DNA of 64,000 nt, taken from assembly GCF_006345805.1 (NCBI RefSeq), contig NC_043013.1:14322001-14386000 (forward strand), in the 5' to 3' direction. A program made the translations under genes and the position numbers. The notes below the pieces were generated by a model, which saw only the letters and a list, made by a program, of their open reading frames with translations, searched no databases and was not told the origin of the DNA. Shown piece by piece: positions 25,525-63,193 of this stretch; positions within the stretch are counted from its first letter, which is position 1, and each line of letters opens with the position of its first letter. The DNA is from Octopus sinensis. Its lineage: Eukaryota.

Positions 25525-26011
25525 ATATACATACACTCATACACAAACACTCATACACACGTACACACACACTGATACACACAGTCATGCACGCACGTGT
25601 AGTGTCCATGCTAATATTTGTTGTACTCCTTTGGATTCAAAAGTTAATGGGTTCATATTGGTGATGATGTGGGTTGCATTGGTTTCGATGTTAGTGGTGG
25701 TGGGCAAGTATTGTTGGCTGGCAGTGTTGTGGTCATATTGATCTTACTAATTGTATTGTTGTGTCTAGTCTCAAGTCAATCCTCGTAGACCTAAGAAAGA
25801 TTATTTCATTCAGCTTTTAAAAATACAGTAAAACACCACATTATACGTTCTTACCAAAAAGTGGATTTGGTTATCTACTTCGTACTGTTTATCACTTTTG
25901 CTGATAGTCGTTGTGTTCATGTTGATGGTAGGTGCACTCACGCAAACATACATACATATGAAAACATTTAAACACACACATAAAAATGCTTTTTGAAAAA
26001 AGAAACAAGTC

Positions 26012-26083
26012 AGGTTCTACCGAGACTCGAACTCGGATCGCTGGATTCAGAGTCCAGAGTGCTAACCATTACACCATAGAACC
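26012..26083 (-). tRNA. tRNA-Gln-CTG: tRNA-Gln, anticodon CTG, probably functional
   Basis: GGTTCTATGGTGTAATGGTTAGCACTCTGGACTCTGAATCCAGCGATCCGAGTTCGAGTCTCGGTAGAACCT: 72-nt cloverleaf with perfect acceptor stem, intact A/B boxes, and a T6 Pol III terminator ~10 nt downstream. Confidence 0.97.
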
Positions 26084-26375
26084 CTTGCACATTATCTACC
26101 TTATATATATCTTACATATACATGTGTGTATGTATGTCCGTGTATGTGTATAACGTGATGATAGTGTTAAAAATCGTTAACTATATACTTTGATCTTCAC
26201 TAAAATACAGATCGCGATTAAGCTAACAAGAAAGTATTATTTTAAATTGCTAACAATTTAGAACTACGCAATACGAGTTTCCGTAAGAGCAAATTTACAA
26301 ACCGTGTCCCGAAATTAATGGTCGTACATTATACTTTCCGTAACTACGAAATCCCGTAAACCGAGGAAACCGTAA

Positions 26376-41283: not shown

Positions 41284-41679
41284 ATGAGGGTGTCCAAGAG
41301 ACACCAACATGCCGAAATAGCAGTCGAAATTCTGACTATAAAAACCACGTTAAGTGTTCATATCGTACCATGAGATAAGACAGAGGGACAAAATATACAA
41401 GCAAAAGTTATTGAATAATTCAAGATCTAGGATTTCTAGTTTTGCTTTAAATAAGCTTTACCGTCATCAATTGAATATATCAGGGGTATGACGGTAAAGC
41501 TTATTTAAAGCAAAACCAGAAATCCTGGATCTTGAATTATTCAATAACTTTTGCTTGTATATTTTGTCCCTCTGTCTTATCTCATGGTACGATATGAACA
41601 CTTAACGTGGTTTTTATAGTCAGAATTTCGACTGCTATTTTGGCATGTTGGTGTCTCTTGGACACCCTCATTTTTAATT
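41276..41679. repeat. Near-perfect palindrome: 192-bp arms, 20-nt spacer
   Basis: 41276-41467 versus 41488-41679, three mismatches counted by eye. Confidence 0.95.
41419..41475 (-). ncRNA. Candidate type I hammerhead-like motif at the palindrome centre
   Basis: TTCAA-TTGATGA-CGGT..AC(T/C)A-GAA-ATCCT(A/G)GAT-C-TTGAA; stem I TTCAA/TTGAA. Confidence 0.4.
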
Positions 41680-44480: not shown

Positions 44481-44957
44481 GAGCTGCGACTCTATTCCCT
44501 GGAACGAAGGCGGGAGAGGCCTGCAGTGATATATATTTGGAAGGTACTGGAAGGACTGGTACCAAACTGTGGAATAAATAGCTATACCAGACCACGAACA
44601 GGTCGTCACTGTGCTCACCCCACTGTGCCGACTGCTTCATCTCGGGTAAGGACGATATACTGTAATAGCTTGGGTTTCAGGGGCTCACAGCTGTTTAACA
44701 ATCTGCTGAAGCATCTGAGGAGCCTCCATGGAGTGGATGTAGACGTTTTCAAATGTGAACTTTACCTCTGACTCGCCGAGATCCCGGAGGAGCCAATATC
44801 TAAGCAATAAAACTCAAAAGAGGGCAGTAGCATCGAACTCCATCCTTCACCAAAAGCCGCTATGACAAAGGTGGAGAGTGGAAAGATTATCACAATGGCG
44901 GTGCTCCAGCATGGCCACAGTCATTGGACTGAAAGAAATAAAAGAATAAAAGAATAA
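44481..44957 (+). mobile_element. CR1-clade LINE 3' fragment (subfamily with (AAGAATAA)n tail)
   Basis: ELRLYSLERRRER..VIYIWKVLEGLVPN..CNSLGFRGSQLFN, then GGCGGTGCTCCAGCATGGCCACAGTCATTGGACTG. Confidence 0.9.
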
Positions 44958-45479: not shown

Positions 45480-46320
45480 GATGATGTTTGCCCATCTTGC
45501 AATGGTTTGTAATTTGTTCGACATCCACTTCTTCGTCTTTTCTTTCGCCGAGGCATAATCCTTATTAAATATTCCTTCCGATCTCAAGGCCGAGCAATTC
45601 TGCATTTTTAACCAACTGCTTCGGCAAAATAAGCAAAATTAATTACTCCGGTCTTTTGTCACCAGTGATGTCATCAAGCGAAGGAATGTGTGTGTTAACC
45701 GCGACCACTCTCTCAAAACCATTCCAAAATCATTTCACGTTAAGAAGACCATGTGGTGCATATGGCAGGACCGCTCTGGGATTATTTGCCGGGAAATCAT
45801 CGCACGAGATCGTCACACATTTTCTGTTATTGGTGAGATGAAAGCGTAAGAGATGTAAATGGCCTATTCCTGACAGAAATGGAAAACTGCAGCACCGTGT
45901 TAAGAGTTGCGTTTATCTGGCTCAACTCAACCCCTTGGAAGCCAATATCAAAGCCAAACGCCCTCAATAAAAATCACATAGTTTCACCATGACAGCACAA
46001 CGCCACATGTCGAACGACAAGTAATCCAAGCAATGGAAAACAAAAGATAGGAGCTACTTGAGCCATAGACTATCACGGCAATCGTTCACTAAAAATTTGG
46101 CAGGAGGGTAAAGCCTACAGTGAACGAACTTGTCGCTGGCGTCAAAGCGTAGAGCGCATCCAAAGATCGTCAGGTTTTTACATTTGGTATCGACCTTCTG
46201 CCAAGCAAATGGGAAGCAATTATTGAAGTGGACAACGACAAGGCTCCAGAATAATGATTTAAATATATTTTCGAATAAATTTAGAATAAAAAAGGTCGTA
46301 CATTATGCACCAACACATGT
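45480..46320 (+). mobile_element. Decayed mariner transposase, 3' two-thirds plus TIR remnant
   Basis: FVTSD, FHVKKTMWCIWQDRSGII, HDSTTPHV, GIDLLPSKWEAII; ends CATTATGCACCAAC. Confidence 0.8.
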
Positions 46321-46351
46321 ATATAAGCACATGTATGAATATACAATCATA

Positions 46352-46416
46352 GGGATTCTTTATTCCTATATTCTTGTTTCAGCCACGCGGCTGCGGTCAT
46401 GCTGGAGCAATACCGT
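46352..46416 (-). mobile_element. Isolated CR1/SINE-A 3' tail joined to U6
   Basis: CGGTATTGCTCCAGCATGACCGCAGCCGCGTGGCTGAAACAAGAATATAGGAATAAAGAAT. Confidence 0.8.
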
Positions 46417-46420
46417 GGTA

Positions 46421-46524
46421 TAACTATGGAAGCGTCCCGAATTTGCGTGTCATCCTTGCGCAGGGGTCATACTAATCTTCTCTATATCGTTCCAATTTTA
46501 GTATATGTATTGACGATACAATGG
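46421..46524 (-). pseudogene. RNU6: U6 snRNA pseudogene
   Basis: ACATATACTAAAATTGGAACGATATAGAGAAGATTAGTATGACCCCTGCGCAAGGATGACACGCAAATTCG..TTCCATA; ACAGAGA box mutated to ATAGAGA and AGC triad to AGT. Confidence 0.92.
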
Positions 46525-46531
46525 TGTATAT

Positions 46532-46584
<53 letters not shown>

Positions 46585-46628
46585 TATATATACGTAGCTA
46601 TCTAAATACACCAATACACGCACACACA

Positions 46629-46862
46629 GACGGCAAACAGGCAGAAAAGATAGCACGCCGGGCGAAATGCGTAGCCGTATTTCGTCTGCCGTTACGTTCT
46701 GAGTTCAAATTCCGCCGAGGTCGACTTTGCCTTTCATCCTTTCGGGGTCGATAAATTAAGTACCAGTTACGCACTGGGGTCGATGAAATCAACTTAATCT
46801 GTATGTCTATCCTTGTTTGTCCCCTCTGTGTTTAGCTCCTTGTGGGTAGTAAGGAAAGAAAA
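46629..46862 (+). mobile_element. Family B SINE monomer, tail 1
   Basis: Near-consensus core and tail. Confidence 0.9.
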
Positions 46863-51849: not shown

Positions 51850-52306
51850 GGCGTGGCTATGAGGTAAGAACCTTGCTTTCCAACCACATGGTCCCAGGTT
51901 CAGTCCCACTGCGCGGCAACTTCAGCAACTGCTTTCTACTATAAACTTTTGAGTAGATTTAGTCTTCTTCTATAGCCTTTTGGGTGGTATTTATTGGTAG
52001 ACAGAAACTGAAAGAAATTCATTATATGTATAGAATATATGAGTGAGTATGTGTGTTTGTCCCCCCCACCCCACTATTGTTTAACAAACGGTGTTCCACA
52101 AAAGAGACCGATGGAATAAGTACCAGGCTTAACAAAAAGTAAATCCTTGTGTCGATTCCTTTGACTAAAAATGTTTTAAAGCGGTGCCCCAGCATGGCCG
52201 CTGTCTAATCACTGAAACAAATAAATGGTAATATGCACACACTAAAGGCAGTGCTCCAGCATGGCCGCAGTCCAATGACTGAAACAAGTAAAAGAGTAAA
52301 AGAGTA
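51850..52306 (+). mobile_element. Diverged family A SINE with a second, younger 3' tail appended
   Basis: Two successive GGTGC(C/T)CCAGCATGGCCGC tails at ~52180 and ~52250. Confidence 0.8.
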
Positions 52307-55612: not shown

Positions 55613-55712
55613 NNNNNNNNNNNNNNNNNNNNNNNNNNNNNNNNNNNNNNNNNNNNNNNNNNNNNNNNNNNNNNNNNNNNNNNNNNNNNNNNNNNNNNNN
55701 NNNNNNNNNNNN
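55613..55712. other. Assembly gap (100 N)
   Basis: Seen directly. Confidence 1.
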
Positions 55713-56802: not shown

Positions 56803-56834
<32 letters not shown>

Positions 56835-56870
56835 CGTTTATATATATTATATATATACATATATATATAC

Positions 56871-56935
<65 letters not shown>

Positions 56936-57061
56936 GTATATATATATACGTATATATATTATAATTTATATATATATATATATTATATAAATATATATAT
57001 ATATATATATAAGTATGTATGTATGTGTATATATATATATATTTTATTTGATCTTGAATTT

Positions 57062-57370
57062 TCCAGTTTCAGCTCATGAGCTGTGTGGCCAGGCTGGAGC
57101 ACCGCCATGTGGTTTGCTACATGATTTTACCTCACGAATGCTTTTTAGCAACTGCCATTTGGTGCATGAGAGAGTTCGATGCAGTTGCTCTCATCTGCAC
57201 CTCTTGCCGTGAAGTTGGTTCATCCGGGACACCTGACAGGAAGAGATCCAGTCCTACTTTAAAGAGATCCGCATCTACACCATGCAGGTCCCTCAGGTTC
57301 TTCGGGACGATATTGAGGAGCTGTGGGCCTCTGAAACCCAGGCTATCAGAGTATCTTGTCCTACATCACG
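57062..57370 (-). mobile_element. CR1 LINE 3' fragment (a)
   Basis: Matches the 3' ends of copies b and c. Confidence 0.9.
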
Positions 57371-57412
<42 letters not shown>

Positions 57413-57518
57413 GTATATATATATATATATACGTATATATATATATATATATATATACGTATATATATATATGTATATATATATATACGTATATATATAT
57501 ATATGTGTGTATATATAT

Positions 57519-58474
57519 AAAAGTTTCACAGGCAATACAGAACCCTGAGGACACTAAACGCCTGCAATGTGAGCTGGACAAAATATACAAGTGGGCTGAA
57601 AAGAATAGCATGCAGTTCAATGCTGAAAAGTTTCAAGCTTTATGCTATCAGCATGCAAAACTAAATGCAATACCCAATGAATACACTGGACCCGGATGAA
57701 TTGCAATCCCACAGGCACAATCAGTGCGTGACCTGGTTCTTCACATGAGTGATGACGCAACCTTTCGTGTACATGTTGCTAAATTGGCAATGAAATGTAG
57801 ACGACTGGCCAGATGGATTCTCAGAAACTTTAGAACAAGAGAACAAGAAACCATGATGGTCCTCTGGATGACACTTGTCCTAAGCCACTTTGACTATTGC
57901 TCTCAGCTATGGTCACCATCCAGTGTCAAGCTGATTACAGAACTTGAGGCGATCCAACGTAGCTACACGAGGAAGATAGCCTCTGTGCAGAATATAAGCT
58001 ACTGGGAAAGACTCAAGAGATTAAAACTATATTCCTTGGAGCGTAGGCGAGAAAGATATGCCATAATATACATCTGTCACAAATTTTGGCATTGAGAGTT
58101 ACACAAATGCCAGAATTGGGCGCCACTGCGTGGTGCCGAGGACTCCAAATTTGCCATCAAGATGTAGGACAAGATACTGTGATAGCCTGGGCTTCCGAGG
58201 CCCACAGCTCTTCAATATCCTCCCGAAGAACCTAAGGGACCTGCATGGGGTGGATGCAGATGTCTTTAAAATGAAACAGGATCTCTTCTTGTCAGGTATC
58301 CCAGATGAACCAACTTCACGGCAGGAGGTGCAGATGAGAGCAGCTGCTTCGAACTCTCTCATGCACCAAATGGCAGTTGTAAAAAGCATTCGTGAAATAA
58401 AACCATGTAGCAACACCAAATGGCGGTGCTGCAGCATGGCCACAGCTCGTGAGGTGAAACTAGAATCAATCAAT

Positions 58475-58475
<1 letters not shown>
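57519..58475 (+). mobile_element. CR1 LINE 3' fragment (b)
   Basis: [13 protein letters not shown]...YWERLKRLKLYSLERRRERY; (AATC)n tail; ~20-bp internal deletion near 58075. Confidence 0.95.
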
Positions 58476-58537
<62 letters not shown>

Positions 58538-58569
58538 TATATAGATATATATATATATAGATATATATA

Positions 58570-58623
<54 letters not shown>

Positions 58624-58644
58624 GCATATATATATATGTATATA

Positions 58645-58683
<39 letters not shown>

Positions 58684-58711
58684 ATATATATATATACATA
58701 CATATATATAT

Positions 58712-58800
<89 letters not shown>

Positions 58801-58801
58801 C

Positions 58802-58834
<33 letters not shown>

Positions 58835-58839
58835 CATAC

Positions 58840-58870
<31 letters not shown>

Positions 58871-58881
58871 CATACATATAT

Positions 58882-58923
<42 letters not shown>

Positions 58924-58941
58924 TACATATATATACATACA

Positions 58942-59020
<79 letters not shown>

Positions 59021-59021
59021 G
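58476..59021. repeat. Imperfect (TA)n array
   Basis: Seen directly. Confidence 0.95.
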
Positions 59022-61247
59022 ATTGATTGATTGATTGATTCTAGTTTCAGCTCATGAGCTGTGGCCATGCTGCAGCACCGCCATTTGGTGTTGCTACATG
59101 GTTTTACTTCACGAATGCCCTCTAGCAACTGCCATTTGGTGCATGAGAGTTCGATGCAGCTGTCCTCATCTGCACCTCCTGCCGTGAAGTTGGTTCATCT
59201 GGGATACCTGACAAGAAGAGATCCAGTTTCATTTTAAAGACATCTGCGCCCACCCCATGCAGGTCTCTTAGATTCTTCGGGGGGATATTGAAGAGCTGTG
59301 GGCCTCGGAAGCCCAGGCTATCACAGTACCTTGTCCTATATCTTGATTGCAAATTTGGAGTCCTAGGCACCACGCAGTGGCGCCCAGTTCTGGCATTCGT
59401 GTAACTCTCGATGCCAAAGTTTGGGACAAGTCCCTCTAGGATCTTCCAGATGTATATTATGGCATATCTTTCTCTCCTACGCTCAAGGAATAGAGTTTTA
59501 ATCTCTTGAGTCTTTCCCAGTAGCTTATATCCTGCATAGTGGCTATCTTCTTCGTGTAGCTACGTTGGATCGCCTCAAGTTCTGTGATCAACTTGACACT
59601 GGATGGTGACCATAGCTGAGAGCAATAGTCAAAGTGGCTTAGGACAAGTGTCCTCCAGAGGACCATCATGGTTTCTTGTTCTCTTGTTCTAAAGTTTCTG
59701 AGAATCCATCCGGCCAGTCGTCTACATTTCATTGTCAATTTAGCAACATGTACACGAAAGGTTGCGTCATCACTCATGTAAATACCCAGGTCACGCACTA
59801 ATTGTGCCTCTGCGATTGCAGTTCCTCCGGGTCCAGTGTATTCATTGGGTATTGCATTTAGTTTTACATGCTGATAGTATAAAGCTTGAAACTTTTCAGC
59901 ATTGAACTGCATGCTATTCTTTTCAGCCCACTTGTATATTTTGTCCAGCTCACATTGCAGGCGTTTAGTGTCCTCAGGGTTCTGTATTGCCTGTGAAACT
60001 TTTGTATCATCTGCATAACTTGTGATCGTGGCTCTCTGCGTGGCTGAGGGCATTCTGAGAGGGCCATTATGAACAGTAGTGGTCCCAGAACAGTGCCCTG
60101 CGGAACACCGCTCACTATTTGCGTGCTAATGGAAGTGGCCCCATTGGCTACTAGCCACCTGACTTCTATCTTTCAGAAAGTCATGAAGCCATTCTCCCAG
60201 TTTTCCAACTATGCTGAGATCACGCAGTTTGTGACATATCATACCATGATCGACTTTATCAAAGGCCTTTGCAAAGTCGAGATATATCACTACCACATTT
60301 GAGTGGCTGAGCAGTCGTTTCAGCACCCAGTCATAGTGTTGTAGGAGCTGAGTTAATTAGCTTCTCCCTGGTCGGAAACCATGTTGGGTGTCAGGCAGCA
60401 AGTCATTTTCTTCAAGGAAGGTGATCAGTTTCCTTCTGACTATTCGTTCCATGACCTTGCTGATGTGTGAGGTCAGAGAGATAGGTCTGTAGTTCTTGGC
60501 CTCCGCTCTGCTACCTCCTTTATGAATAGGGCATATTTTACCTTCCTTCAGTTTTCTTGTAAGTTTGCCAGCTGCAAGGAAGCTCTGAAAGAGGAACTGC
60601 AGTGGTCTTGCTAGGACTCTCTTACATACTTTTAGGAGGATTGCCGGGAATCCTACGTGGCCAGTAGCTGAGTCTGTTTTCATTTCATCTATAGCCTTGA
60701 TTACATCGTCTTCCTTTATATCGACGTAATTTATCGTCGCCGCCTCTGATTTTATATCTGCAGTGGTAAAGAAGTCAGTTGGATTGGTGATTTGGAGATG
60801 CCCAAGGGGTGGAGTGAAAACACTCTTGAATTGCTCATTCAGTATTTCACTTACCCTCATTGGTTTTCCTGTGAGTGTGCCATCCTTTTCAAGGAGTGGT
60901 CCTATCCTACAGTGAACCGTAGCTGTTTCTTTGGCATACCTGTAGAAAGCTCTGGGGTTAGATTTTATGTTGTCTATAGCCCAGGCTTCTTTGTCTGCTC
61001 TTTCCTTTTCATGGGAGAGTTGCAGACATTTTTCAATTTCCAACAGTTTTATTTTTAGGCGGGACTTTTCACTGCTTTCAATTTGTTTGTTTAGGCGATT
61101 TGAAATTTTTGTACGCCGTCCCATTAAAATCTTCCTCTCTCTGGGGATTTTGTTCTTGTGTACAGTGGCCTTTCTCTCTGGGACACATTTGTAGCATATG
61201 GCTTGCATTACAGACATGAATTGTTGAAGTTTCACGTCGATGTCTGA
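59022..61247 (-). mobile_element. CR1-clade LINE ORF2 (RT domain, frameshifted, 5'-truncated) (c)
   Basis: NYRPISLTSHISKVMERI, QHGFRPGRS, YLDFAKAFDKV, SGVPQGTVLGPLLF, YADDTK, YWERLKRLKLYSL across ORFs 60357-61304, 60126-60326, 59864-60115 and 59457-60053. Confidence 0.97.
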
Positions 61248-61326
61248 TATATATACATATACATATACATATATATATATACATATATATATATATACAC
61301 ACACACATTATATATATAATATATAT

Positions 61327-61357
<31 letters not shown>

Positions 61358-61411
61358 GGATATATATATATGTATATATATGTATATCTATATGTATATA
61401 TATGTATATAT

Positions 61412-62475
61412 AAATCCTTAAATCCTTTAAAATGTTTTAGCCCGAAGGCCGCGGCCATGCTGGGGCACCACAGCTGAATGAGCTACACTAATTTGTGAAT
61501 CCACCTCTGATACGTGGCACTTGATCAACAAGGGAGTTCGATGCTGCTGCCCGCATCCGCGTCTCCTGTCGTGAGGTAGGTTCATCTGGGACTCCCAACA
61601 AGAAGAGATCCAGTTTAGTTTTAAAGAAACCTACATCCACACCATGTAAGTCTCTCAGGCATTTAGGGAGGATGTTAAAGAGCTGTGGTCCTCTGAAACC
61701 CAAGCTGTTTCAGTATCTGGACCTGTATTTTGATGATGATGTGGAATCCTGGCACCATGCAGTGGCGCCCCGTTCTGCGGTTGGAGTAACTTTGAATGCC
61801 AAAGTTGGGGACAAGACCCTCCAGGATTTTCCAGATGTATATCACCGCATATCTCTCCCGCCTCCGCTCTAGGGAAAGGTTTAATACCTTCAGTCTTTCC
61901 CAGTAGCTGATATTTTGCATTGAGACGATTTTCTTTGTGTAGCTTCTCTGAATTGCTTCGAGTTCTGTTGTTAGTTTTATATTGTGTGGTGACTAAAGTT
62001 GGGAGCTGTAGTCCAAGCGGCTGAGGACGAATGTTTTCCATGGGACCATCAGTGTCGCCTTCCCTCTTGTTCTGAAAGTTCGGAGAATCCATCCAGCTAG
62101 CCGTCTGCATTTTATCACCAGATTAGCAATATGCATTTGGAAAGATGCATCATTGCTCAAGTCAATGCCCAGGTCACGCACTGATTTTGACTCAGGGATT
62201 GCAATTCTTCCTGGGCCAGTGTATCCAGTCTTCACGTCATTTACCTTTGTGTGCCAGTAGCGCAGGGCCTGGAACTTACCTGCATTAAACTGCATGTTGT
62301 TGTCCTCAGCCCACCTGTATATTGTGTCCAGCTCATGTTGCAGATGCGCGTTATTTTCAGGGTTTTGTATTGCGTGGGAGACTTTTGTGTCATCTGCATA
62401 GCTAGCAAGGGTGGTCATCGTAGCAACTGAAGGCATGTCTGAAAGGGCCACTATGAACATCAGTGGCCCCAAGAC
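61412..62475 (-). mobile_element. CR1 LINE 3' fragment, second subfamily (d), (AAGGATTT)n tail
   Basis: [44 protein letters not shown]. Confidence 0.95.
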
Positions 62476-62481
62476 AGGGAG

Positions 62482-62945
<464 letters not shown>

Positions 62946-63193
62946 TAGTAAGGAAAAATTTTTTTTAAATGCAGAATGCTCAAATGAAAGAAAATTTTAA
63001 TAAAATGAGAAAATGATAAAATATATAATATATATATTTATTCAACCGGTTTTCGTCAATGTATGACTTGTCAAGAATATTTATGTTTTAAGAAGTTTTT
63101 TTTTAAAAATTAGAAAGGGGAAAAAGAAAATTGCAATGTTTTTTGTAAAAGAATAATGATAAAATGATAAAAGAATAATGATAAAAAATAATG

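What the first reader, a model, noticed from the sequence alone, without database searches (positions are those of the whole stretch)
46352..46524. U6 snRNA fused to a CR1/SINE 3' tail: chimeric retrocopy or U6-headed SINE
On the minus strand, a near-full-length decayed U6 is followed within ~10 nt by only the terminal ~65 nt of the CR1/SINE-A tail (..TGCTCCAGCATGACCGCAGCCGCGTGGCTGAAAC + GAATA repeats), in the same orientation. U6/LINE chimeras are established for mammalian L1, and snRNA-headed SINEs for crocodilian U1/U2. I know of no U6/CR1 example in a mollusc. U6 has an external promoter, so a multi-copy family would need an explanation for its transcription.
Basis: partly seen in the sequence, partly recalled or inferred. 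Interest (0 to 1): 0.7.

Follow-up and report, generated by a model that had tools for sequence, protein, structure and literature searches.

The report
U6 retrocopy fused to LINE-type tail
A dead copy of the U6 spliceosomal RNA sits directly in front of the short two-hairpin 3' tail that the local LINEs and SINEs use to get copied; it is most likely a single chimeric retrocopy, a kind already known in vertebrates and here seen in an octopod-like genome.

Summary
Rfam finds one full-length U6 at 46419-46519 (-) at 84.9 bits, carrying inactivating changes (ACAGAGA>AUAGAGA, AGC>AGU). On the same strand, 0-10 nt downstream, lie about 60 nt of the 3' tail shared by about 20 SINE and LINE copies in the window (leave-one-out nhmmer 38.6 bits, E 3.5e-11).

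That tail is a two-hairpin module followed by GAAAC and 8-mer repeats. Its pairs covary across families. The U6-linked tail keeps 11 of 12 pairs through two compensated changes that no other copy in the window has. It is therefore not a decayed "SINE-A" tail but comes from another, unseen LINE/SINE lineage.

The unit is flanked 5' by (TA)34 and 3' by TA/CA-rich sequence, like the local LINE copies, which all lie inside (TA)n arrays. No significant target-site duplication is seen.

Best reading (about 0.6): one chimeric retrocopy, made by template switch or RNA ligation from a tail RNA to U6. U6 chimeras with L2, RTE and their SINEs were reported in platypus and lizard by Doucet 2015.

A U6-headed SINE family (about 0.15) cannot be tested here, because no searchable collection holds this genome. 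Independent adjacent insertion is about 0.12.

It is a new member of a known kind, of modest interest.

The parts
46527..46592 (.). (TA)34 microsatellite, the 5' flank of the unit. It ends 8 nt before the U6 start.
   Evidence: TRF finds period 2, 34 copies, 93% matches. Its purine/pyrimidine alternation score is 0.97. The four LINE copies at 57-62.5 kb are likewise bracketed by (TA)n arrays.
46419..46519 (-). U6 snRNA-derived segment, full length by the Rfam model. It is non-functional (ACAGAGA>AUAGAGA, AGC>AGU, GGCC>GACC), with a shortened or diverged 5' stem-loop and no T4 terminator left.
   Evidence: Rfam RF00026 at 84.9 bits, E 3.5e-20, model 1-105. The alignment to canonical U6 is clear from U6 nt ~10 onward and uncertain for nt 1-9.
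46413..46424 (-). Junction zone GTTATACCACGG. It may be a mutated U6 U-tract (ATTTTT>AGTTAT) plus 3-5 nt, or the sequence just upstream of the tail as in the LINE Lc copy (TTATCACAATGG).
   Evidence: Direct reading and side-by-side comparison with the LINE 3' ends. The exact breakpoint cannot be fixed.
46394..46415 (-). Tail hairpin 1 (CGGUAUUGC-UCCA-GCAUGACCG). It includes the compensated pair U46412-A46397, where most copies have C-G.
   Evidence: RNA fold at -17.3 kcal/mol, z -2.58. Pair counts on 21 tails.
46380..46393 (-). Tail hairpin 2 (CAGCC-GCGU-GGCUG). It includes the compensated pair C46390-G46383, where SINE-A has U-A. This exact hairpin sequence (stem plus GCGU loop) is unique among the 20 tails of the window.
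   Evidence: In this helix, 9 cells have changes on both sides against 3.0 in shuffles (0 of 500 shuffles reach it).
46355..46379 (-). AAAC followed by about 2.6 degenerate 8-mer repeats (AAGAATAT AGGAATAA AGAAT), the 3' end of the retrocopy.
   Evidence: Direct reading. The same unit, AAGAATAA, ends the LINE Lc copy at 44907; SINE-A ends in AAGAGTAA repeats.
46300..46354 (-). 3' flank: CCCTATG, then a TA/CA-rich stretch that alternates purines and pyrimidines. It holds the candidate TSD words ATTGTAT (46347-46341) and TATATACA; neither is significant.
   Evidence: Alternation score 0.87. The longest word shared with the 5' flank is 8 nt, P about 0.08-0.18.

Best explanation
This is a single chimeric retropseudogene. 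Steps 1-4 below are the proposed mechanism and are inferred, not shown.

1. A LINE of the local family group recognises its own 3' tail, as 'stringent' LINEs do. The family has reverse-transcriptase (RT) ORFs and a tail made of two hairpins, GAAAC and short tandem repeats.
2. The LINE nicked a TA-type microsatellite and began target-primed reverse transcription on the tail of a LINE or SINE RNA.
3. After copying only the ~60-nt recognition module, the cDNA continued onto a U6 snRNA molecule. This happened either because the RT switched templates to the U6 3' end, or because U6 had already been ligated to a tail-bearing RNA fragment.
4. U6 was then copied to, or nearly to, its 5' end and the product was integrated.

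The copy has no U6 promoter of its own and has since decayed.

Shown here: the two parts, their orientation and adjacency, the intact two-hairpin structure of the tail, and the microsatellite flanks.

Inferred: the single-event origin, and the choice between template switch and ligation.
For: - Full-length sense U6 is followed within 0-10 nt by a same-strand tail. Chance adjacency is about 1.6e-3.
- The tail part begins 2-5 nt upstream of the base of hairpin 1, so it is just the structured module that covaries across at least 3 LINE families and the SINEs. On 12 pairs, 88% of cells are paired and 13 cells are changed on both sides against 4.0 in shuffles, with 0 of 500 shuffles reaching this (folds).
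- The U6-linked tail keeps 11 of 12 pairs via two compensated changes. It was therefore a working tail when copied, not debris.
- The whole U6+tail unit lies between (TA)34 and a TA/CA-rich flank. All four LINE copies at 57-62.5 kb are bracketed by (TA)n in the same way. 9 of 20 tails have such 3' flanks against a 17% background, binomial P 0.004.
- U6 divergence of about 6-7% falls within the range of the neighbouring SINE copies, 2-10%.
- There is precedent. U6 fused to the 3' ends of L2, RTE and their SINEs occurs in platypus and lizard, and those clades 'form only chimeras' (PMC4476161). In L1 chimeras U6 is nearly always sense and full-length and the LINE part 5'-truncated (PMC11838501).
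Against: - No significant target-site duplication brackets the unit.
- The donor tail variant is not seen elsewhere in the window, so no donor family can be named.
- The first ~9 nt of U6 are poorly alignable, so the 5' boundary is uncertain.
- The U-tract is reduced to GTTAT. A fresh U6 3' end would not look like this unless two substitutions occurred there.
- Copy number in the genome is unknown.
Confidence: 0.6

Rival explanations
1. This is a copy of a U6-headed SINE family: a master element made of U6 plus the minimal two-hairpin tail, which amplifies as a unit using the local LINE machinery.
For: - The tail is cut down to almost exactly the structured recognition module, as expected for a streamlined SINE.
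- Its hairpin variant is private, as each LINE or SINE family in the window has its own.
- No T4 Pol III terminator remains between U6 and tail.
- snRNA-headed SINEs exist: SINEU, PMC4494074.
- The Octopus vulgaris repeat table lists one 'SINE/U' family (369,490 bp) and one 'U-L1' family, without saying which snRNA (PMC13282606). This is a lead only.
Against: - There is only one copy in 64 kb, and no second U6 even at E<=1.
- Metazoan U6 is driven by an upstream promoter that a retrocopy does not carry (established knowledge).
- No U6-headed SINE was found in the literature searches.
- With hundreds of LINE and SINE families in octopus genomes, a private tail variant is also expected for a one-off chimera.
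- The antisense-ORF protein search found only plain U6 ORFs. That database barely covers this genome, so this is weak evidence.
Confidence: 0.15
2. Two independent events. An older U6 gene copy or pseudogene sat here, and a severely 5'-truncated SINE/LINE copy (tail only) later inserted right at its 3' end.
For: - Tail-only insertions occur in this window. One at 52238-52300 (+) lies 12 nt after the end of another SINE, within a CA-type microsatellite.
- These elements cluster in microsatellites, which raises the chance of near neighbours.
- No TSD brackets the whole unit.
Against: - It requires same-strand placement within 0-10 nt of the U6 end, about 1.6e-3 before any targeting bonus.
- No TSD or shared word flanks the tail alone. 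The longest word is 5 nt, P 0.74.
- The 5' side of U6, not of the tail, abuts the (TA)n array as in single LINE insertions.
- No U6 promoter-like context could be recognised, though cephalopod PSE motifs are not known to me.
Confidence: 0.12
3. Assembly or read-chimera artefact joining a U6 sequence to a repeat tail.
For: The window has a scaffold gap at 55613-55712 and is extremely repeat-rich.
Against: The junction is 9 kb from the gap. The U6 is decayed like a genomic pseudogene, not like a fresh RNA or cDNA contaminant. The flanks are continuous unique and repeat sequence.
Confidence: 0.02

Closest known systems
U6 chimeras with stringent LINEs and their SINEs: U6-L2 and U6-Mon-1 in platypus; U6-L2, U6-RTE and U6-AnolisSINE2 in Anolis (Doucet et al. 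2015, PMC4476161)
   Same: Sense U6 is joined at its 3' end to the 5'-truncated 3' end of a non-L1 LINE or of its partner SINE. The LINEs involved recognise their own tail. There is no poly(A).
   Different: The host here is an octopod-like mollusc, not a vertebrate. The LINE clade is unassigned (CR1-like by tail architecture). The retained tail is very short, about 60 nt. The vertebrate cases were supported by TSDs; no TSD can be shown here.
U6/LINE-1 chimeric retropseudogenes of mammals (Buzdin 2002; Moldovan 2019; PMC11838501)
   Same: The architecture is the same: full-length sense U6 plus a 5'-truncated LINE 3' end. The candidate mechanisms are the same: template switch during TPRT, or RtcB-type RNA ligation before it.
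   Different: L1 uses poly(A) and makes clear 7-20 bp TSDs at TT/AAAA sites. Here the 3' end is a hairpin module with 8-mer repeats, and the target appears to be a TA microsatellite.
SINEU, snRNA-headed SINEs of crocodilians (Kojima 2015, PMC4494074)
   Same: A spliceosomal snRNA sequence lies at the 5' end and a LINE-type tail at the 3' end. Both raise the same puzzle of how an externally promoted head would be transcribed.
   Different: SINEU heads are U1 or U2 (Pol II genes). SINEU are proven multi-copy families with a fixed structure. Here there is one copy, with a U6 head.
CR1-type 3' ends: hairpin plus octamer microsatellite recognised by the element's RT (PMC4316615 and references there)
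   Same: A conserved stem-loop lies directly upstream of short tandem 8-mers at the extreme 3' end. The tail is shared between LINEs and SINEs. 5' truncation is severe.
   Different: Here there are two adjacent hairpins and family-specific repeat units (AAGAGTAA, AAGAATAA, AATC, AAGGATTT). Placement of the RT in the CR1 clade was not tested.
snoRTEs of platypus: snoRNA fused to an RTE tail (Schmitz et al. 2008; from my own knowledge, not checked here)
   Same: A small nuclear or nucleolar RNA is joined to a short stringent-LINE tail and retroposed.
   Different: snoRTEs are a multi-copy class, some copies are expressed from introns, and the head is a snoRNA.

Membership tests
U6/LINE (or SINE-tail) chimeric retropseudogene | U6 sequence in sense orientation directly 5' of a LINE/SINE 3' end | tested here: met
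   U6 lies at 46419-46519 (-) and the tail at 46355-46417 (-), on the same strand with a gap of 0-10 nt.
U6/LINE (or SINE-tail) chimeric retropseudogene | U6 part complete at its 3' end; LINE/SINE part 5'-truncated | tested here: met
   The Rfam alignment reaches model position 105 of 105. Only about 60 nt of tail are present, starting 2-5 nt before hairpin 1.
U6/LINE (or SINE-tail) chimeric retropseudogene | One target-site duplication bracketing the whole chimera | tested here: inconclusive
   The longest shared words are TATATACA (8 nt) and ATTGTAT (7 nt), P about 0.08-0.18 against shuffles and random window pieces.
U6/LINE (or SINE-tail) chimeric retropseudogene | Insertion site typical of the mobilising LINE | tested here: met
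   The unit lies between (TA)34 and a TA/CA-rich flank. The four LINE copies at 57-62.5 kb all lie between (TA)n arrays.
U6/LINE (or SINE-tail) chimeric retropseudogene | Other U6 chimeras in the same genome have variable breakpoints | not testable with these tools
   No searchable collection holds this genome. The control scans for the SINE-A tail were also empty or gave only chance hits.
SINE (U6-headed) | Many copies with the same head-tail junction | not testable with these tools
   One copy in 64 kb. Database searches are uninformative.
SINE (U6-headed) | Internal promoter in the head that travels with the copy | not tested
   Metazoan U6 genes rely on upstream PSE and TATA elements (established knowledge). 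The (TA)34 upstream is TATA-like only by composition.
SINE (U6-headed) | LINE-derived 3' tail competent for RT recognition | tested here: met
   The two-hairpin module keeps 11 of 12 pairs, two of them through compensated changes.
CR1-clade LINE tail | 3' hairpin followed by an octamer microsatellite, no poly(A) | tested here: met
   compare PMC4316615.
CR1-clade LINE tail | RT of the partner LINE groups with the CR1 clade in a phylogeny | not tested
   Only RVT_1 fragments are recognised. The best database relatives are unnamed or labelled 'reverse transcriptase'. The motifs HGFRPGRS and YADDTK...W...N.M.FN look CR1-like from memory only.
Functional U6 snRNA gene | Invariant ACAGAGA box and AGC triad | tested here: not met
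   The copy reads AUAGAGA and AGU.

The most novel reading that the evidence does not exclude
The locus is one member of a U6-headed SINE family in octopods. That would be the first SINE whose head comes from a type-3 (externally promoted) Pol III gene, made of U6 plus a minimal two-hairpin LINE tail with its own co-evolved hairpin variant. It would have to be transcribed by read-through, by chance TATA-like (TA)n targets upstream, or by some internal U6 element.
Probability: 0.13. Interest if true: 0.65.

Novelty: new member of a known kind. Interest (0 to 1): 0.3.

Why it matters
If this is a one-off chimera, it extends the known range of U6/stringent-LINE chimeras from vertebrates to a cephalopod-type genome. 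That supports the view that switching or ligation onto U6 is a general property of non-LTR retrotransposition. It also gives a natural 'deletion mutant' marking the minimal tail, two hairpins plus repeats, that this LINE group can prime on.

If it proved to be a family, it would raise a real question about how an externally promoted Pol III head sustains a SINE.

Either way the locus itself is a dead pseudogene with no expected cellular function.

Tried and rejected
1. **Protein-level trick.** The antisense strand of the unit is open, and its ATG lies in the tail motif. I searched that translation against 5.8 billion proteins. All 56 hits are ordinary U6 antisense ORFs with no tail part.
2. 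**Exact look-ups of window ORFs**. None is on record.
3. **LINE RT search**. The best hit is 64% identical, on a 690-bp ENA contig. No cephalopod genome proteins came up, so I could not harvest genome pieces this way.
4. **SINE-A antisense ORF search**. It gave only two hits: an ENA contig with a full tail (L121, 64.7 bits) and an Argonauta hians protein. This places the window among octopod-like cephalopods but yields just 20 kb of Argonauta DNA with weak tails and no U6.
5. **Pattern scans for U6...tail** in metagenome, genome (bacterial and archaeal) and viral contigs. All returned 0 hits. The positive controls failed too. The tail-only scan in metagenomes gave only chance ~20-bit matches, and the exact SINE-A tail is absent from the other two collections. 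These negatives therefore say nothing.
6. **TSD search** for both scenarios. Not significant.
7. **Low-threshold Rfam scan** for further snRNA fragments. It returned only microsatellite-driven miRNA noise.
8. **Donor assignment.** The tail core is 77-82% identical to SINE-A copies. Its upstream TTAT.CAC and its AAGAATAA repeats resemble LINE Lc instead.
9. **Literature.** I found no report of a U6-derived SINE or of U6 chimeras in molluscs.

Full report

Yes. On the minus strand, Rfam's U6 model (RF00026) matches 46419-46519 at 84.9 bits (gathering score 44), E 3.5e-20, covering model positions 1-105. It is the only snRNA hit in the 64-kb window. A scan at E<=1 adds only microsatellite-driven miRNA noise.

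The copy cannot be a working U6:
- The invariant ACAGAGA box reads AUAGAGA.
- The AGC triad reads AGU.
- GGCC reads GACC.
- The 5' stem-loop is shortened.

Against canonical U6, the part from about nt 10 to the 3' end differs by five substitutions and one deletion, about 6-7%. The first ~9 nt align poorly.

Downstream of it lies a sequence whose core motif CAGCATGRCCRCAG occurs 20 times in the window against 0.63 expected. A profile HMM built from the other 19 copies, leaving this one out, scores 46417-46365 at 38.6 bits, E 3.5e-11.

With 21 such tails on the two strands of 64 kb, the chance that one starts within 10 nt downstream of a given point on the same strand is about 1.6e-3.

**2. What is the tail?**

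The 20 copies belong to several families.
- An abundant tRNA-headed SINE of about 330-380 bp ('SINE-A'; alignment).
- At least three related LINE families with reverse-transcriptase ORF fragments (Pfam RVT_1; tblastn map):
  - La, three copies at 57.06-61.3 kb;
  - Lb, 61.4-62.5 kb;
  - Lc, 44.48-44.95 kb.

All share the same 3' module. It folds into two adjacent hairpins followed by GAAAC and short tandem repeats. The repeat unit is specific to each family: AAGAGTAA in SINE-A, AATC in La, AAGGATTT in Lb and AAGAATAA in Lc.

On an alignment of 21 tails, the 12 base pairs are formed in 88% of cells, a value no shuffle of 500 reaches. 13 cells carry changes on both sides against 4.0 in shuffles, again reached by 0 of 500. 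Sliding the partners by 1-3 columns drops pairing to 22-44% (hairpin 2 alone).

This is the classical picture of a 3' recognition element shared by 'stringent' LINEs and their SINEs. A hairpin plus an octamer microsatellite is the hallmark of CR1-type 3' ends (PMC4316615). I did not test the RT clade, so 'CR1-like' stays a label of architecture only.

**3. The tail attached to U6.**

It keeps 11 of 12 pairs and carries two compensated changes relative to SINE-A:
- U46412-A46397, where most copies have C-G;
- C46390-G46383, where SINE-A has U-A.

Its hairpin 2, CAGCC-GCGT-GGCTG, is not seen in any other copy in the window.

Six differences concentrated in a 14-nt hairpin with pairing preserved are not random decay of a SINE-A tail. 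The donor was another lineage with an intact, functional tail.

The core is 77-82% identical to SINE-A tails. The few bases upstream (TTATACCAC against TTATCAC in Lc) and the 8-mer unit (AAGAATAN) resemble LINE Lc instead. No family in the window can be named as donor.

The tail part starts 2-5 nt 5' of the base of hairpin 1. It is almost exactly the structured module and nothing more.

**4. The flanks.**

Eight nucleotides 5' of the U6 start lies (TA)34 (46527-46592). The 3' flank is TA/CA-rich.

All four LINE copies at 57-62.5 kb lie between long (TA)n arrays on both sides. 9 of 20 tails are followed by sequence alternating purines and pyrimidines, against a 17% background, binomial P 0.004.

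The U6+tail unit as a whole therefore looks like one insertion by this machinery into its preferred target.

A target-site duplication cannot be shown. The best shared words are TATATACA (8 nt) and ATTGTAT (7 nt), with P of about 0.08-0.18. For a tail-only insertion nothing is shared beyond 5 nt, P 0.74.

**5. Explanations.**

*Best, about 0.6: a one-off chimeric retrocopy.* Target-primed reverse transcription started on a tail-bearing LINE or SINE RNA. After the ~60-nt module, the cDNA continued on U6 snRNA, either by template switch or because U6 had been ligated to the RNA fragment beforehand.

Orientation, a complete U6 3' end and a strongly 5'-truncated LINE/SINE part are the recurrent features of U6 chimeras (PMC11838501). 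Doucet et al. 2015 found such chimeras with L2, RTE, Mon-1 and AnolisSINE2 in platypus and lizard. They concluded that stringent LINE clades 'form only chimeras', and they report one unresolved U6-CR1 case in turkey.

The divergence of the U6 part, about 6-7%, is in the range of the neighbouring SINE copies, 2-10% from their local consensus.

*Rival 1, about 0.15: a U6-headed SINE family.* Points in favour:
- the minimal tail;
- the private hairpin variant;
- the loss of the T-run terminator;
- the precedent of SINEU.

The O. vulgaris repeat table lists one 'SINE/U' family of 369 kb, but does not say which snRNA.

Points against:
- a single copy here;
- the external promoter of metazoan U6;
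- no report of such a family.

Octopus genomes also hold hundreds of LINE and SINE families, so an unseen donor variant is unsurprising.

*Rival 2, about 0.12: two events.* A tail-only copy would have inserted beside an older U6. Such tail-only copies exist: one at 52238-52300 lies 12 nt after another SINE. Microsatellite targeting also clusters insertions. This reading still needs a same-strand hit within 10 nt, has no TSD of its own, and leaves the (TA)n at the U6 5' end as a coincidence.

*Artefact:* about 0.02.

**6. What could not be done.**

The decisive test, counting U6-tail junctions genome-wide, was not possible. The protein database barely covers this genome.

Pattern scans of metagenome, prokaryote-genome and viral contigs found no U6-tail match. 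They also failed the positive control with the tail alone. The negatives are therefore uninformative.

The only taxonomic anchor is an Argonauta hians protein that matches a SINE-A antisense ORF at 78% identity over 32% of the query. An ENA metagenome contig also carries a full SINE-A tail.

**7. Verdict.**

The most likely identity is a U6/stringent-LINE-tail chimeric retropseudogene. That is a known kind in vertebrates and, as far as my literature searches show, not yet described in molluscs. It is a new member of a known kind, of modest interest (0.3). The U6-headed SINE reading remains open at about 0.13-0.15 and would be more interesting.

Noticed in passing
window 56806-62947: Four LINE copies each lie between long (TA)n arrays: 57058-57365 (-), 57520-58470 (+), 59024-61304 (-) and 61419-62472 (-). 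The arrays are at 56806-57042, 57374-57519, 58476-59020, 61247-61412 and 62486-62947. This looks like a LINE group that targets (TA)n microsatellites, comparable to the known microsatellite-specific LINEs.
   Followed up: partly
window 52172-52300 (+): A tail-only SINE-A copy of about 63 nt (52238-52300) sits 12 nt after the end of another SINE's tail (52172-52233), inside a CA-type microsatellite. It shows that this machinery does make ~60-nt 'module only' insertions.
   Followed up: partly
window 26011-26084 (-): A canonical-looking tRNA-Gln(CUG) gene (Rfam 67.7 bits; ARAGORN). It is the only tRNA call in a window full of tRNA-derived SINE heads.
   Followed up: no
window ~41357-41598: A near-perfect inverted repeat with arms of about 115 nt (TGTTCATATCGTACCATGAG...), foldback or MITE-like. 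It gives a sub-threshold Rfam MIR2670 hit (98.6 bits against a gathering score of 117).
   Followed up: no
window ~45650-46270 (+): A decayed Tc1/mariner-like transposase reading frame with stops and frameshifts (...KTMWCIWQDRSGII..., ...HHDSTTPHV..., ...GIDLLPSKWEAIIEVDNDKAPE*). It ends about 80 nt from the 3' flank of the U6-tail unit. It is recognised by eye only; Pfam was not run on the right strand.
   Followed up: no
window 46648-46860 (+): A second, different tRNA-type SINE (...GTTCTGAGTTCAAATTCCGCCGAGGTCGACTTTGCC...GGGGTCGATAAATTAAGTACCAG...) lies head-to-head with the U6 unit, across the (TA)34 array. It has no two-hairpin tail, so it probably has another LINE partner.
   Followed up: no
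window 55613-55712: A run of 100 N, a scaffold gap.
   Followed up: no
L121 100-160 (-) (ENA ERZ1023377 contig, 538 bp); P0102 (Argonauta hians): An ENA 'metagenome' contig carries a full SINE-A tail (64.7 bits), so it is host or prey octopod DNA. An annotated Argonauta hians 'hypothetical protein' is really the antisense translation of this SINE.
   Followed up: partly
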